In this document: in pieces, positions 5,955 to 9,203 of the stretch
Layout: every line of letters begins with the position of its first letter
How positions within the stretch are numbered: the stretch's first letter is position 1
From: Blastocladiella emersonii ATCC 22665
Lineage: Eukaryota > Fungi > Blastocladiomycota
Assembly (NCBI GenBank): GCA_025594325.1
Contig: JANHCV010000009.1
Span: 310,001-374,000, forward strand
DNA length: 64,000 nucleotides
Reading direction: 5' to 3'
Program-made: the position numbers and the translations under genes
The notes under the pieces: model-generated
Told to the model about the DNA's origin: nothing
The model's input: the letters and a program-made list of their open reading frames with translations, nothing else
The model's database searches: none

Positions 5955-6099
5955 GGTGTGAGTTACATGTAATGAGTGCGTGGAGAGAGCGAGGATGGAG
6001 TGCGGGCGCGGAGCCGCGGTTTTGAGGCGGCCGGAAGGAGGAAGGAAGAGGAAGAGAGAAATAAATAAATAATAAATAATAAATTGACGCGTTGCTCAT

Positions 6100-6370
6100 G
6101 CATATTTACAATCAAACAACAAAAATTGGAGGTAAAGTGCACCGGCCGACGATGCGGCCGAACGAGGGTCACCCGGCCCAGCAGGGCAAGGGCACCTCGC
6201 AGCTGAGCTGGCTTGCTACTATTCGAGCCACCGCCCCGCCGCTGACTCCTAAGCACAGCGCGTGCTCGTGGTCTTGGCAAGGGAAGCACGGACGTGCGGA
6301 CACGATGCGTGTCACACGCTCCAACCCAGCTGGTGGATGGTGAGGGGAAGGAGGGTAAGGACGGCTTGCA
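6100..6370 (-). ncRNA. Candidate Fanzor omegaRNA (scaffold plus guide); boundaries uncertain
   Basis: Immediately 3' of the Fanzor stop codon. Stem-loops at 6143-6160 (cggccg/cggccg), 6209-6230 (tggct/agcca), 6252-6266 (agcac/gtgct) and 6299-6313 (gacacg-atg-cgtgtc). The position matches known Fanzor/TnpB omegaRNAs. Confidence 0.4.
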
Positions 6371-7750
6371 CTACTCGACCGTGAGCGTGGTGCGGCGCTT
6401 GCGGTGGTAGCGGTGCTTGGGGCGGGCGGCGGGCAGCGGGTTGCCGTCCGCGTCCTTGGCCTGGTCCTCGAAGATGAGCTGCTTGATGGCGAACGAGAGG
6501 ATGTTGACGGCCGCGTTGCGGTCGCGCTGGACGCGGACGCCGCAGCGACGGCACGCGCGCGTCTGGTACACCTTCTTGTTGGTCTTGCCGAGCAGGTTGG
6601 TCTTGTCGGCCTTGGCGGCGGCGGGGTCGGCCATGGCGCACGCGGCGCACCACTTGCTCGAGAAGTTCTCGTCGACGGCGTACACGGTGACGCCGCGCGA
6701 GCGCAGCTCCTTGACCATCTCAACCACGGGGCCCTTGTCGGCCGCCGAGATCATGCCGAAGCCCGAGAAGTTGCGGCCGATGAGCACGACGTGGCCGCGC
6801 AGCGCGCGGGCGAGGTCGGCCCAGTACGCCTTGCGGCGGCCCTCGTTGGTGAACTTGGTGCTGCACACGCCGTGGCTGCAGCTCTCCTCGACCGTGGCCT
6901 CCATGTACTCGGTGGCGACCCAAGCGACCGCGCGGTGGTCGCCGGCAACGCACGAGTGCGCTGCATCGCCTGGTACGAGGCCCGCCTTGGCGCGCGACGC
7001 CTTGCGCTGCTCGCGGGCCTGGTTGGTGCCGACGTGGTGGTGGAACTCACAACTTGACAGCGACTGGAACAGCGGCCAAGTCAGGACGACGCGCGAGACC
7101 GCCGACCGAATGTACGCCTTGAGCACCTCGGACCACGGGCCGTCGCCGCCCTGCGCCGCCAAGTACGCGAGGTACTGGAGCCGCCGGAACAGGCGCGCGA
7201 GCTCAAACGGCACAACGAAGCCGGTGAGGAAGTCGCGCACGCCGGCGTCAATGACAAACATGCGCTGGCCGTAGCGGACGACAATCTTCTTCTTGTGCGA
7301 CTCGATCTTGTCACGGCCGCCCGGGATCGGGACCTGGACTGAGCCATGGGGTGCGAGCTTGTCAGCCTTGGCGAGCACCTGGTCGAGCGTGAGGCCGCCC
7401 GCGCCGTCGACCAAGACGCCCGCGAACGGCTTGTCGAACTTGCCCGTGGAGCGACGCCCTTGACGCCCGCCCGTCGTGGTGGTGGTGGTGGTGGTCTTGG
7501 TCCCGGCCTTCTTCTTGCCGGCAGCCTTCTTGACCATGTTGCCGCCAGCGCCCTCCTCGTCCTCCTCCTTGTCACCGCCGTCGCCGACCGTGTCCGCCCT
7601 TGGCCGGATGCCGCCCTTGTACAGGTACACGCGAACGACATGGCCGTCGGTCGAGATGCGGCCCTGGAACTGGTTGATGAGCGAGCCGCTGGGGCCGTGG
7701 CGCCGCAGGATGCGCGGGTCAACGAAGCCGTTGCACAGGTCGAGGAGCGC
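6371..7750 (-). CDS. Fanzor1 (TnpB/Cas12-like RNA-guided endonuclease), 5' end missing or spliced
   Basis: The frame is open from about 7765 (upstream stop at 7766-7768) to 6371. Motifs: QFQGRISTDGHVVRVYLYK, RuvC-I MFVIDAGVRDFLTG, VVLIG (Gly at the canonical TnpB Glu site), alternative RuvC-II AVDENFSSKWC, zinc finger CAAC...CRRC, RuvC-III QRDRNAAVNI, and basic NLS-like stretches. Confidence 0.9.
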   Translation of the reverse strand, partial: ALLDLCNGFVDPRILRRHGPSGSLINQFQGRISTDGHVVRVYLYKGGIRPRADTVGDGGDKEEDEEGAGGNMVKKAAGKKKAGTKTTTTTTTTGGRQGRRSTGKFDKPFAGVLVDGAGGLTLDQVLAKADKLAPHGSVQVPIPGGRDKIESHKKKIVVRYGQRMFVIDAGVRDFLTGFVVPFELARLFRRLQYLAYLAAQGGDGPWSEVLKAYIRSAVSRVVLTWPLFQSLSSCEFHHHVGTNQAREQRKASRAKAGLVPGDAAHSCVAGDHRAVAWVATEYMEATVEESCSHGVCSTKFTNEGRRKAYWADLARALRGHVVLIGRNFSGFGMISAADKGPVVEMVKELRSRGVTVYAVDENFSSKWCAACAMADPAAAKADKTNLLGKTNKKVYQTRACRRCGVRVQRDRNAAVNILSFAIKQLIFEDQAKDADGNPLPAARPKHRYHRKRRTTLTVE

Positions 7751-8927
7751 CTGTTCACTTGCAGGTCAAACACCGTCGTCACGCTCGTGCAGAACTTTGC
7801 GCGGGTGATCGCCAGCCTCTTCTTCGTCACGCTGCTGGGCGCGGACACGGCCGAGGAGGTGGTTTGCGACGGTCGACCTGCGCACATGATCCCATCCGTG
7901 CGTGCCCGTATCGCCGACGGCACGCTCTCCGCCTTCAACGAGGAGGCCGAGGCGACGGCCAAGGTGGCAGTGGAGGTCATGGCGCGCCTCAACGTGGACG
8001 GGCTCATGGCCGCCACCGGGCTGTTCGCGTGCAAGGCCACGTCCTTTGTCGCCAGTGGCATTGCTCCTGTGTTCCTCGACTTGGCTCTACTGGACCTCTA
8101 CGTGCAGCTCTGCGGCGCGCGTCTCAACCACTCGGACTCGCACCTGGGCATCCTCCTCCCGATGCAGATGGGCGGCGTGTTTGGTTGTGGCTTCCACGGA
8201 CCGGGTTGCGCAATGGGGTGTCTCGGGGTGATGTGGGCGTCGCTGCTGGCCCAGTCGAACGAGGCCGACATGCGTGCACGCCTTGCGTGCCTCATCAACC
8301 CGGGTCTCAACATTGTGCTGCTCCACGACGTTCGCGGTGCTGGTCATTTCTTTGGCGCTACCATTGACGTCCAGGTTGCCGACGGCCACATCACGTTGTG
8401 CCACATCAAGTGGTACAACCCAAGCTCGGCGACAACGACGTGTTCCTCACCAACTTTGTCGAGATCGTCGAGAACCTCGCCGGGTGCGCCGTGACGACCA
8501 GTCACTACCCGCCCAACTTCTACCCGCAGGTCGACGGCTGCGACTGCCTACTCTACGTGATGCTGTTCGCCGAGCTGATCGCGTACGAGACGGCGGCGGG
8601 TGCGCCCTACCCCTTGTCCCGCGAGGCGCCCATGTTTGGTGCCGACCTGGATGGTGCTGGAACGTGGCCGCTGCTCAAGTACGAGTGGTACTTCCGCTCA
8701 GATGCGTCGCAGGTCGCTCGCCGTCGCGCGTTTGCACACGTCCTCACTGTACGTACTCACCCATGGTCCCGCTCATTGGCCTGGTACTGGCGCGACTTAC
8801 TAGCTCCCTTTTGTTTCTCTAGCTGCTGGCCGTCGGGCTCCACGGGCGTCGGATGCAGCGCAGGCGTGGCGACGACGTTCCCGTTCCGCCCAACGCTGTC
8901 TCGCTCCTGAACCGCAAGATGGACTGA
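7751..8927 (+). pseudogene. Ulp1/C48-like (CE clan) cysteine protease; no clear 5' end, one frameshift
   Basis: GC3-rich coding on the + strand. Motifs FLDLALLDLYVQL, GHFFGATIDV (His), WYNP (third residue Asn) and YPQVDGCDCLLYVMLFAE (Gln/Cys). A 1-nt frameshift lies near 8418. Intron 8749-8822; stop at 8925-8927. Confidence 0.62.
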
Positions 8928-9203
8928 TTGCGTTGGCGCTTTGGGTGGTGGAGTTGTTTTGGATGAATGAATGCGATGTGGGATGAATGAAGAATGATTG
9001 AACTCCTGGAAGATGGGGAACACGACAGGGAACGTGGAGACAAGGTGGTTGCTCGGTCCCTCCGCTCGGTGACTCATGCACAGTGACGAAACGTGATTCA
9101 CCGCCGCGTCTTCTCACGCCCCCACTCGCCTTCCTGTCCGCACTTCGCTTGAACGACGCGTCCTCTCCGCTCTCTCCTTCCACCAACCACACACACGCAT
9201 CAA

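What the first reader, a model, noticed from the sequence alone, without database searches (positions are those of the whole stretch)
6371..7750. Fanzor1 RNA-guided endonuclease with an intact RuvC triad
Seen: FxGxIxTDG motif, RuvC-I Asp (VIDAG), Gly at the canonical TnpB Glu position (VVLIG) with the relocated Glu in VDENFSSKWC, a C2-C2 zinc finger, RuvC-III Asp (RDRNAAVNI), K/R-rich NLS-like segments and about 460 open codons. Known: this rearranged catalytic site defines Fanzors. Inference: a new Fanzor1 from an early-diverging fungus. Its nuclease lobe is uncorrupted, but the N-terminal recognition region is missing at this locus. It may instead be spliced via a CAG acceptor at 7751-7753, or translated from MVKKAAGKK as a RuvC-only form.
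Basis: partly seen in the sequence, partly recalled or inferred. Interest (0 to 1): 0.88.

Follow-up and report, generated by a model that had tools for sequence, protein, structure and literature searches.

The report
Truncated Fanzor nuclease copy, Blastocladiella
This is a beheaded, probably dead copy of a Fanzor (eukaryotic TnpB-like, RNA-guided DNA-cutting) gene that has multiplied about a dozen times in the fungus Blastocladiella emersonii; every copy keeps the same tail but has lost a different amount of its head.

Summary
The frame has 459 open codons (6374-7750). D168, E361 and D410, a Gly at the old Glu position and a CxxC...CxxC finger are all intact.

The protein belongs to the TnpB/Fanzor superfamily. 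It hits Pfam PF07282. An alignment profile hits TnpB, Cas12f and SpuFz in the PDB. The predicted nuclease lobe superposes best on the fungal Fanzor1 structures SpuFz (Z 13.4) and PpFz.

The locus is not a complete gene. Window 6103-7751 is one of at least 11 copies in Blastocladiella emersonii ATCC 22665, 93-96% identical between copies. All 11 share one sharp 3' end, about 265 nt past the stop codon. All 11 have different 5' ends.

The window copy lacks at least 130 structured N-terminal residues that longer copies and paralogues have. It has no conserved start codon. Most of its private changes are CpG decay. The CAG acceptor only joins a 6-residue annotation exon, and the MVKK methionine is private to this copy.

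The 3' tail is structured, with compensatory changes between two subfamilies, so it is a candidate omegaRNA.

The same nested 5' truncation was described in 2013 for Fanzor1 elements in Chlamydomonas. This is a new member of a known kind, of modest interest.

The parts
6103..7751 (-). 5'-truncated copy (about 1.65 kb) of the multicopy Fanzor element, family 1
   Evidence: blastn gives 94-96% identity to L001, L002, L005 and L008. Homology ends at 7751 on the 5' side and at 6103-6110 on the 3' side. Logan contig depth is 4-16x here against 1x in the flanks.
6374..7750 (-). Open frame of 459 codons: the C-terminal part of a Fanzor (second half of WED, RuvC, TNB). The stop codon is at 6371-6373.
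   Evidence: No frameshift or stop relative to the family consensus.
7247..7249 (-). RuvC-I Asp (D168, VIDAG)
   Evidence: Invariant in alignments A5 and A6. Lies in the model range that superposes on the SpuFz segment holding D383.
6776..6778 (-). Gly (G325, VVLIG) at or next to the canonical RuvC-II Glu position; no acidic residue nearby
   Evidence: Kept in at least 90% of rows. Gly or Pro at this position is the Fanzor rule (PMC10530073).
6668..6670 (-). Relocated catalytic Glu (E361, VDENFSSKWC), 36 residues after G325
   Evidence: Invariant. The published alternative Glu lies about 45 residues downstream.
6542..6649 (-). TNB zinc finger CxxC...CxxC (C368, C371, C400, C403)
   Evidence: Pfam PF07282 covers residues 310-377. 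The cysteines are conserved.
6521..6523 (-). RuvC-III Asp (D410, QRDRNAAVNI)
   Evidence: Invariant. The profile aligns this block to the RDENAALNI block of ISDra2 TnpB.
7406..7543 (-). Low-complexity acidic, then K- and T-rich insert (NLS-like). It holds the private Met72 of MVKK.
   Evidence: pLDDT below 50. The other family-1 copies that cover this residue read TVKK.
6103..6370 (-). Conserved, structured 3' non-coding tail up to the element end: candidate omegaRNA scaffold
   Evidence: Shared by all copies. In the eight copies aligned, the two subfamilies differ by 9 compensatory pairs, 5 of them in one 12-bp helix. 96.6% of cells are paired against about 40% when partners are slid. No Rfam match.
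6103..6122 (-). Common 3' terminus ...TTGTTGTTTGATTGTAA(ATA), followed by a slightly variable ATAYGCA(T)
   Evidence: The same end is seen in all 11 copies. A similar T-rich ...TTGTAAATA or TTGATTAATA motif lies 205-230 nt after the stop in two other paralogue families.
7751..7752 (-). 5' breakpoint of this copy
   Evidence: Contigs from other copies continue past 7751 with the sequence seen in L001 and L005 (loose ends).
7752..7891 (-). Intron (7752-7873, GT..CAG) and 6-codon first exon MGSCAQ (7874-7891) of the NCBI model H9P43_007095; judged an annotation patch
   Evidence: It adds no homologous N-terminal sequence.

Best explanation
Window 6103-7751 (minus strand) is a 5'-truncated, most likely inactive copy of a multicopy Fanzor1-like element of Blastocladiella emersonii. 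It keeps the second half of the WED domain, the whole RuvC/TNB nuclease lobe with an intact D168/E361/D410 site, and a 265-nt structured 3' tail that ends at the element's fixed 3' terminus. It has lost the N-terminal strand and helices (first WED strand and REC-like region, at least 130 structured residues) that longer copies and paralogues carry. By analogy with the solved SpuFz1 complex (inferred, not tested here), that region should help hold the omegaRNA and the guide-target duplex. Shown: the family identity, the truncation, the nested set of 5' ends, the common 3' end, the intact catalytic residues, the CpG-dominated private changes, and the compensatory structure in the tail. Inferred: the full-length protein is an omegaRNA-guided double-strand DNA endonuclease whose guide is read from the DNA just past the 3' terminus. 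Also inferred: this copy makes no working nuclease, although its tail could still give an omegaRNA usable by an intact paralogue. Also inferred: the family spreads by a copying process anchored at the 3' end that often stops short of the 5' end. The closest precedent for that spread is the one-ended, Helitron2-type rolling-circle copying proposed for the Fanzor1 elements CRe-1/2/3 of Chlamydomonas. RNA-mediated retroposition is the main alternative, and I cannot separate the two.
For: Identity: Pfam TNB hit. Profile A4 hits TnpB, Cas12f, LaTranC, SpuFz and ApmFz2 in the PDB. Foldseek's top three matches are SpuFz states at probability 1.00. VIA-align gives SpuFz 8gkh Z 13.4, rmsd 3.6 over 221 residues, model 148-427 on chain 362-623, a range that holds SpuFz D383, E541 and D606. 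PpFz scores 11.2, ApmFz2 9.6 and TnpB 9.5. AFDB clusters named Cas12f1-like TNB or transposase also match.

Truncation: all copies end together at the 3' side and start at 11 different points. On L008 coordinates these are 11082, 11279, 11323 (the window copy), 11400, 11505, 11597, 11676, 11748, 12201 and 12356, and L008 itself runs further upstream. Summed contig depth rises from about 4x at 7656-7779 to 8-16x at 6300-6900. Upstream DNA is unrelated between copies.

Missing head: P0029 (788 aa, L008), P0006 (L005) and paralogues P0012, P0015, P0019 and P0023 share a PxLxxxxRFF strand, helices and a conserved Trp, all N-terminal to the window's first residue. phmmer places window residue 139 at P0012 residue 338.

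Decay: 21 of 30 private changes are CpG to TpG or CpA, and private changes split 13 non-synonymous to 9 synonymous. Four other copies carry frameshifts or a stop codon, and the longest copy also looks frameshifted and has a 24-nt in-frame deletion.

Tail.

Insertion signature: L007 has a perfect 14-bp direct repeat at both junctions.

Precedent: 5' truncation, 3' over-abundance and variable TSDs of 7-19 bp in Fanzor1 CRe-1/2/3 (PMC3627910).
Against: The frame is fully open and the catalytic residues are untouched, so a shortened protein cannot be excluded. No RNA run was listed, so neither silence nor expression is shown. Stop codons are rare at 66-70% GC, which weakens the value of an open frame either way. 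Private dN/dS of about 0.56 is below 1, although CpG and transition bias inflates the synonymous rate. The N-terminal fold of the full-length paralogue was predicted only at low confidence, so calling it WED/REC rests on position and secondary structure. For the mode of spread, only 1 of 11 copies has a clear TSD. No 5' terminus, inverted repeat or partner transposase was found. The only strong 3' hairpin ends about 50 nt from the end, not within 20-30 nt as in Helitron2.
Confidence: 0.8

Rival explanations
1. One reading: a functional Fanzor1 gene at this locus. Its recognition lobe would come from an upstream exon through the CAG acceptor, or it would work as a RuvC-only enzyme starting at MVKKAAGKK.
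For: The frame is open for 459 codons and the triad and zinc finger are intact. The NCBI model H9P43_007095 does splice into the CAG at 7751-7753. dN/dS between copies is about 0.44.
Against: The upstream exon adds only 6 residues. No homologue of the N-terminal region was recognised in the DNA upstream of 7751: a translated comparison of 4 kb matched no other copy, and tblastn with the paralogues ran at most ~100 nt past 7751, across an in-frame stop. The homology breakpoint at 7751 is one of 11 different breakpoints. Met72 is private to this copy. The consensus has no ATG before MFVIDAG. The private changes are mostly CpG decay. In solved Fanzor1 the WED domain binds the omegaRNA scaffold (PMC10432273), and part of that domain is missing here.
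Confidence: 0.06
2. On the mode of spread: the copies are RNA-mediated. A Fanzor transcript ending at the fixed 3' terminus would be reverse-transcribed at chromosomal nicks by a non-LTR retrotransposon enzyme acting in trans. That gives 5' truncation, an occasional long TSD and microhomology at the junctions.
For: The copies form a nested 5' series with one 3' end. L007 has a 14-bp TSD whose inner end resembles the element sequence at the junction. The copies are intronless. The common end lies about 265 nt after the stop, where an mRNA might end. Fanzor1c is reported as preferentially associated with LINE, among other transposons (PMC10530073).
Against: No copy has a poly(A) or microsatellite tail. 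Ten of 11 copies lack a clear TSD. No element sharing the 3' tail was found in about 250 kb of fetched DNA. Full-length paralogues are also intronless, so intron loss cannot be used as a test. TGTAA is not enriched after other ORFs once the Fanzor copies themselves are discounted.
Confidence: 0.3
3. The window insertion is larger than the Fanzor fragment: a composite unit 6103-9072 that also carries about 1.3 kb of unrelated 5' DNA, flanked by an 8-bp duplication CTCATGCA (6095-6102 and 9073-9080).
For: The 8-mer sits exactly next to the 3' end and again 1.3 kb upstream of the breakpoint. Extra non-Fanzor sequence at the 5' side of truncated copies is described for the CRe elements (PMC3627910). 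Part of 8100-8600 is present twice in the genome.
Against: Five of the eight bases (TGCAT on the minus strand) belong to the element's own terminus ATATGCAT, which is also seen in L005 and L011. The 8-mer occurs 6 times in the window. I estimate the chance of such a match within 1.5 kb at a few per cent. No other copy carries this upstream DNA.
Confidence: 0.12

Closest known systems
Spizellomyces punctatus Fanzor1 (SpuFz1, PDB 8GKH; PMC10432273) and Parasitella parasitica Fanzor (PpFz)
   Same: These are the best structural matches of the nuclease lobe: Z 13.4 for SpuFz1 and 11.2 for PpFz. Shared features are the RuvC fold with the relocated Glu, a TNB zinc finger, a fungal host, a multicopy family, and a non-coding structured tail after the stop codon, where the SpuFz1 omegaRNA lies.
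   Different: Sequence identity is only 13-17%. phmmer finds no relative outside B. emersonii. SpuFz1 elements have 30-nt inverted repeats, and none was found here. This copy lacks the part matching SpuFz1 residues before about 362.
Fanzor1 elements CRe-1, CRe-2 and CRe-3 of Chlamydomonas reinhardtii, non-autonomous Helitron2 elements (Bao and Jurka 2013, PMC3627910)
   Same: They are Fanzor1-bearing, transposase-less multicopy elements. Most copies are 5'-truncated and almost all are intact at the 3' end. Truncated copies can carry TSDs of 7-19 bp, and one here has 14 bp.
   Different: In CRe elements 10-70% of copies have TSDs that lie after TTTT, and the termini match known Helitrons. Here only 1 of 11 copies has a clear TSD, no T-rich target is seen, no Helitron-like terminus was shown, and the gene is intronless, whereas CRe genes have 5-10 exons.
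ISDra2 TnpB and Cas12f (prokaryotic relatives)
   Same: The RuvC/TNB core is shared. The profile aligns the CxxC...RDxNAAxNI block. Fold Z is 8-9.5.
   Different: Those proteins keep the canonical RuvC-II Glu. They sit in IS200/IS605 elements or CRISPR loci, have no NLS-like inserts, and do not show this nested-truncation family structure.

Membership tests
TnpB/Fanzor superfamily | C-terminal motif D-X(125,275)-[TS][TS]-X-X-C4 finger-X(5,50)-RD (PMC3627910) | tested here: met
   D168-X195-S364 S365-KW-C368..C371..C400..C403-X5-R409 D410 (motif quoted).
TnpB/Fanzor superfamily | Match to curated TNB / OrfB zinc-ribbon profile | tested here: met
   PF07282 scores 38 bits against a cut-off of 26.3. 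The same model hits paralogues P0029, P0012, P0019 and P0016.
TnpB/Fanzor superfamily | RuvC fold in which the three acidic residues meet at one site | tested here: inconclusive
   The fold matches Fanzor, TnpB and Cas12 over model residues 148-427, and the three residues fall in the range aligned to SpuFz D383, E541 and D606. The tools return no coordinates, so the distances could not be measured.
Fanzor (both types) and rearranged TnpBs | Canonical RuvC-II Glu replaced by Gly or Pro, with a conserved alternative Glu about 45 residues downstream (PMC10530073) | tested here: met
   G325 is kept in at least 90% of rows and no acidic residue is nearby. E361 is invariant and lies 36 residues downstream.
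Fanzor (functional enzyme) | Complete WED and REC lobe N-terminal to RuvC-I | tested here: not met
   Homology to longer copies stops at 7751. Conserved N-terminal blocks of P0029, P0006, P0012, P0019 and P0023 are absent here.
Fanzor (functional system) | omegaRNA encoded at the 3' end, running to the element boundary | tested here: inconclusive
   The 3' tail is conserved, with 9 compensatory pairs. The z-score of the single fold is only -1.35. There is no Rfam family and no RNA run was listed.
Fanzor1 rather than Fanzor2 | Placement in the Fanzor1 branch; larger REC; not in IS607-type elements | tested here: inconclusive
   The fold is nearest to SpuFz1 and PpFz (Z 13.4, 11.2) against ApmFz2 at 9.6, but GtFz1 scores only 8.5. 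No tree with reference Fanzors was built. No serine recombinase was seen among the called neighbours of the fetched loci.
Helitron2-type non-autonomous element (CRe-like) | 5' truncation with 3' over-abundance | tested here: met
   All 11 copies share the 3' end and have 11 distinct 5' ends. There is a depth gradient.
Helitron2-type non-autonomous element (CRe-like) | Asymmetric terminal inverted repeats, hairpins at both ends, termini shared with a RepHel element | tested here: inconclusive
   The 5' terminus is unknown, because the longest copy, L008, has no partner to define it. No inverted repeat links the L008 upstream region to the 3' end. The strong hairpin CGGCCG-N6-CGGCCG ends about 50 nt from the end. 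The genome could not be searched for a partner.
Non-LTR (LINE-type) retroposed copies | 5' truncation, variable TSDs, and a poly(A) or simple-repeat tail or a LINE-derived 3' tail | tested here: inconclusive
   Truncation is met. A TSD is present in 1 of 11 copies. There is no A-rich or repeat tail. No partner was found in the fetched DNA.

The most novel reading that the evidence does not exclude
The family may need no transposase of its own kind. In that reading the Fanzor-omegaRNA complex makes the chromosomal break, and the element is then copied in from its fixed 3' end, from RNA or by one-ended strand invasion, which often stops early. B. emersonii would then be a second system, independent of the Chlamydomonas CRe elements, in which Fanzor1 elements show 3'-anchored copying. 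That would make the long-open question of what Fanzor does for its element directly testable.
Probability: 0.1. Interest if true: 0.8.

Novelty: new member of a known kind. Interest (0 to 1): 0.36.

Why it matters
The locus itself is a decayed fragment and will not give a new editor.

Three things at family level have some value. First, B. emersonii holds a private radiation of very divergent Fanzor-like genes. There are at least ten families below 50% identity, and none was detectable by sequence in any other organism among 1.84 billion representatives. At least one is an intact intronless 639-aa ORF (P0012, L009). I found no mention of Blastocladiella in the Fanzor papers and supplements I could search.

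Second, the nested 5' truncation with a fixed 3' end repeats, in a fungus, the odd behaviour described in 2013 for Chlamydomonas Fanzor1 elements. That suggests the pattern is tied to Fanzor1 cargo rather than to one host.

Third, the two tail subfamilies give compensatory support for an omegaRNA-like structure that could guide experiments.

Tried and rejected
- A single-sequence PDB search gave nothing significant. A sub-profile of the RuvC-I to RuvC-II region did not bring SpuFz into the printed alignments, so residue-by-residue equivalence to D383, E541 and D606 rests on ranges only.
- Folding a full-length paralogue (P0012:95-639) gave a low-confidence N-terminus with pLDDT 30-70, so WED/REC could not be confirmed by fold.
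- No RNA-seq run was listed, so the 5' end, splicing and omegaRNA expression are untested.
- TSD searches were negative for 10 of 11 copies. I compared the junctions directly, and for eight copies also searched up to 5 kb upstream. L012 has only a weak 8-bp match offset by 5 nt.
- I tested whether TGTAA is a general poly(A) signal. The only peak after ORFs came from the Fanzor copies themselves.
- No terminal inverted repeats were found around L008, and there was no Rfam match.
- The plus-strand ORFs upstream (7802-8491 and 8398-8907), called Ulp1-like in another note, have no Pfam hit at E up to 0.1.
- Supplements of two Fanzor surveys held no Blastocladiella, Allomyces or H9P43 entries, and the third survey has no held supplements.
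- I could not BLAST the whole genome, because the genome collection offered covers only bacteria and archaea. The copy census therefore rests on annotated proteins plus contig depth.
Full report
**What is in the sequence**

The minus strand of 6371-7750 carries an open frame of 459 codons. The stop TAG is at 6371-6373 and an in-frame TGA lies upstream at 7766-7768.
- FQGRISTDG at residue 28
- VIDAG with D168
- VVLIG with G325
- VDENFSSKWC with E361
- a CxxC...CxxC finger (C368, C371, C400, C403)
- RDRNAAVNI with D410
- lysine/arginine-rich stretches

**Which organism and gene**

The closest proteins are all from Blastocladiella emersonii ATCC 22665, assembly GCA_025594325.1. The window's own annotated product is H9P43_007095 (P0010, 465 aa). 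GC content of 66-70% fits this genome.

**Family membership**

- Pfam PF07282 (Cas12f1-like TNB) is hit above its cut-off.
- A profile built from the window ORF plus divergent Blastocladiella paralogues hits ISDra2 TnpB, LaTranC, several Cas12f, SpuFz and mimivirus Fanzor2 in the PDB.
- The AlphaFold model has mean pLDDT 66, and residues 140-430 are mostly above 75. Its first three Foldseek matches are Spizellomyces punctatus Fanzor states at probability 1.00.
- With VIA-align it superposes on SpuFz 8GKH at Z 13.4 and rmsd 3.6 A over 221 residues. Model residues 148-427 align to chain residues 362-623. That range contains the published SpuFz1 metal ligands D383, E541 and D606 (PMC10432273).
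- PpFz follows at Z 11.2. Cas-phi scores about 10, ApmFz2 9.6, TnpB 9.5 and GtFz 8.5.
- AlphaFold DB clusters named transposase or Cas12f1-like TNB also match.
- The sequence fits the Bao-Jurka Fanzor/TnpB motif. It also fits the rearranged-site rule of Jiang et al.: the canonical RuvC-II Glu is replaced by Gly or Pro, and a conserved alternative Glu lies about 45 residues downstream (PMC10530073).

That rule applies to all Fanzors and to some TnpBs, so it does not by itself say Fanzor1. The Fanzor1 call rests on the fold ranking only, and no tree was built. I could not measure whether the three acidic side chains meet, because the tools return no coordinates.

**The locus is a fragment of a repeat**

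I fetched eleven genomic copies of family 1: the window plus L001-L008, L011 and L012.

- They are 93-96% identical in DNA (one short subfamily-B copy, L011, about 90%).
- All end at the same place, about 265 nt after the stop codon: ...TTGTTGTTTGATTGTAA, followed by a slightly variable ATAYGCA(T).
- Each begins at a different place. On L008 coordinates the starts are 11082, 11279, 11323 (the window copy, at window 7751), 11400, 11505, 11597, 11676, 11748, 12201 and 12356. L008 itself runs further upstream.
- Upstream of each breakpoint the DNA is unrelated between copies, even at the translated level.
- Independent DNA contigs show the same picture. Summed depth is about 1x in both flanks, about 4x at 7656-7779 and 8-16x at 6300-6900. 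Loose ends occur at many internal positions. At 7751 other copies continue with the sequence seen in L001 and L005.

**What is missing**

An exhaustive phmmer search of 1.84 billion representatives found only 20 hits. Nine of the ten non-family-1 hits I looked up, and the family-1 copies themselves, are B. emersonii proteins; the tenth is a plant 'serine racemase' that I take as spurious. Six weaker hits were not looked up.

The paralogues I read in full are 505-1055 aa, and two further matches are 881 and 926 aa. They place the window's residue 139 at about residue 338 of P0012 and residue 122 at about residue 315 of P0017. So about 190-200 residues precede the window's first residue.

The longest family-1 copy (P0029, 788 aa, in L008), the next longest (P0006, in L005) and paralogues P0012, P0015, P0019 and P0023 share three features that lie N-terminal to the window's start:
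- a PxLxxxxRFF strand
- flanking helices
- a conserved Trp

By position these correspond to the first WED strand and the REC-like helices. Folding P0012:95-639 gave helices there but at low confidence, so this assignment is inferred.

The family consensus has no ATG before MFVIDAG. The ORF-finder's GTG start at 7630 is Val in the other copies. The Met of MVKKAAGKK is a private Thr-to-Met change of the window copy.

The NCBI model reaches the CAG acceptor at 7751-7753 from a 6-codon exon, ATG GGA TCA TGT GCG CAG, at 7874-7891. It adds nothing homologous and looks like an annotation patch.

**State of the copies**

- The window copy has no frameshift or stop in the covered region.
- L005, L006 and L004 have frameshifts. 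L003 has a stop codon.
- L008 appears to need two frame changes in its N-terminal part and has a 24-nt in-frame deletion before the relocated Glu.
- The window copy differs from the consensus at 30 of 1642 positions, and 21 of these are CpG to TpG or CpA.
- Its private coding changes are 13 non-synonymous and 9 synonymous. None touches a catalytic residue.
- Pairwise dN/dS between copies is about 0.44, and for private changes about 0.56.

I read this as selection acting on the source lineage, followed by near-neutral, methylation-type decay after insertion. The CpG bias makes these ratios soft. Open frames are also cheap at this GC content.

**The 3' tail**

The 265 nt between the stop codon and the common end are conserved and fall into two subfamilies. 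Subfamily A includes the window and six other copies. Subfamily B includes L003, L006, L011 and L012.

- On eight aligned copies the consensus fold has 68 pairs.
- 96.6% of cells are paired, against about 40% when partners are slid.
- Nine pairs changed on both sides, five of them in one 12-bp helix.
- This is effectively one A-versus-B comparison.
- The single-sequence z-score is only -1.35, and Rfam has no match.

Two other paralogue families have a similar T-rich ...TTGTAAATA or TTGATTAATA motif 205-230 nt after their stop codons. This is where a Fanzor omegaRNA scaffold is expected, with the guide read from the flank (PMC10432273). No RNA run was listed, so expression is untested.

**How the family spreads**

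What is shown is copying that preserves the 3' end and truncates the 5' end.

- One truncated copy (L007) is flanked by a perfect 14-bp direct repeat, ACGCACCGCTGCTG. Its inner end resembles the element sequence at the junction.
- The other ten copies have no clear duplication.
- There is no poly(A) tail, no terminal inverted repeat, and no transposase or reverse transcriptase inside the unit.

The same syndrome was described by Bao and Jurka in 2013 for the Fanzor1 elements CRe-1/2/3 of Chlamydomonas. Those show frequent 5' truncation, nearly all copies intact at the 3' end, and TSDs of 7-19 bp mainly on truncated copies. The authors attributed this to one-ended rolling-circle transposition of non-autonomous Helitron2 elements (PMC3627910). 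Craig later noted variable TSDs and fuzzy right ends for Helitrons and Replitron-1 in the same alga, and speculated that Fanzor might be involved (PMC10288648).

Unchecked notes of this scan report Helitrons, and a possible Helitron2-Fanzor pair, elsewhere in this genome. I could not test that. RNA-mediated retroposition explains the truncation and the one long TSD equally well but lacks a tail. I put the Helitron-type route slightly ahead on precedent, but neither is shown.

**A side question**

CTCATGCA occurs at 6095-6102 and at 9073-9080. That could bracket a larger insertion of 6103-9072. However, five of its bases belong to the element's own terminus ATATGCAT, seen in L005 and L011, and the 8-mer occurs six times in the window. 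I rate this reading as unlikely but open.

**Verdict**

This is a real Fanzor-type sequence with an undamaged nuclease lobe. At this locus it is a beheaded, decaying copy of a repeat, not a new complete enzyme. It is a new member of a known kind, and the family behaviour has a published precedent. The best enzyme candidate in this genome lies elsewhere: for example P0012, an intact intronless 639-aa ORF at L009 6001-7920. The scan has already followed up another intact Fanzor1 gene in this genome.

Noticed in passing
window 7752-9072 (+ strand ORFs 7346-8494 and 8398-8910): The DNA just upstream of the Fanzor breakpoint carries plus-strand ORFs that another note calls Ulp1-like. Neither hits any Pfam family at E up to 0.1. 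About 8100-8600 is present twice in the genome, the second version differing at 31 of 316 positions.
   Followed up: partly
window 6095-6102 and 9073-9080: CTCATGCA is directly repeated on either side of 6103-9072. It overlaps the element's own terminal TGCAT and occurs 6 times in the window against 1.6 expected.
   Followed up: partly
L003 19090-20631 (-): A second, very divergent Fanzor-like gene (P0014, 505 aa, about 33% identical) lies about 7 kb from the family-1 copy in the same locus. It has its own ~230-nt tail ending in TTGTAAATA.
   Followed up: partly
L009 6001-7920 (+): P0012 is an intact, intronless 639-aa Fanzor-like ORF with the full N-terminal region. It is the best candidate for an active enzyme among those seen.
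   Followed up: partly
B. emersonii proteins P0012-P0025: There are at least ten Fanzor-like paralogue families below 50% identity. They include 881-1055-aa forms with long Pro/Ser-rich N-terminal extensions (P0016, P0024, P0025). No relative outside this species passed E 0.001 in 1.84 billion representatives.
   Followed up: partly
window 6110-7751: 21 of the 30 private substitutions of this copy are CpG to TpG or CpA. This suggests cytosine-methylation-type decay of repeats in this fungus.
   Followed up: partly
L008 10236-12676: The longest family-1 copy (P0029, 788 aa) seems to need two frame changes in its N-terminal part, which the annotation patches with an 80-nt intron. It also has a 24-nt in-frame deletion just before the relocated Glu. 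So even the longest copy seen is probably damaged.
   Followed up: partly
L007 10033-10046 and 11336-11349: A perfect 14-bp direct repeat ACGCACCGCTGCTG flanks a 1.29-kb truncated copy. It is the only clear target-site duplication among the 11 copies.
   Followed up: yes
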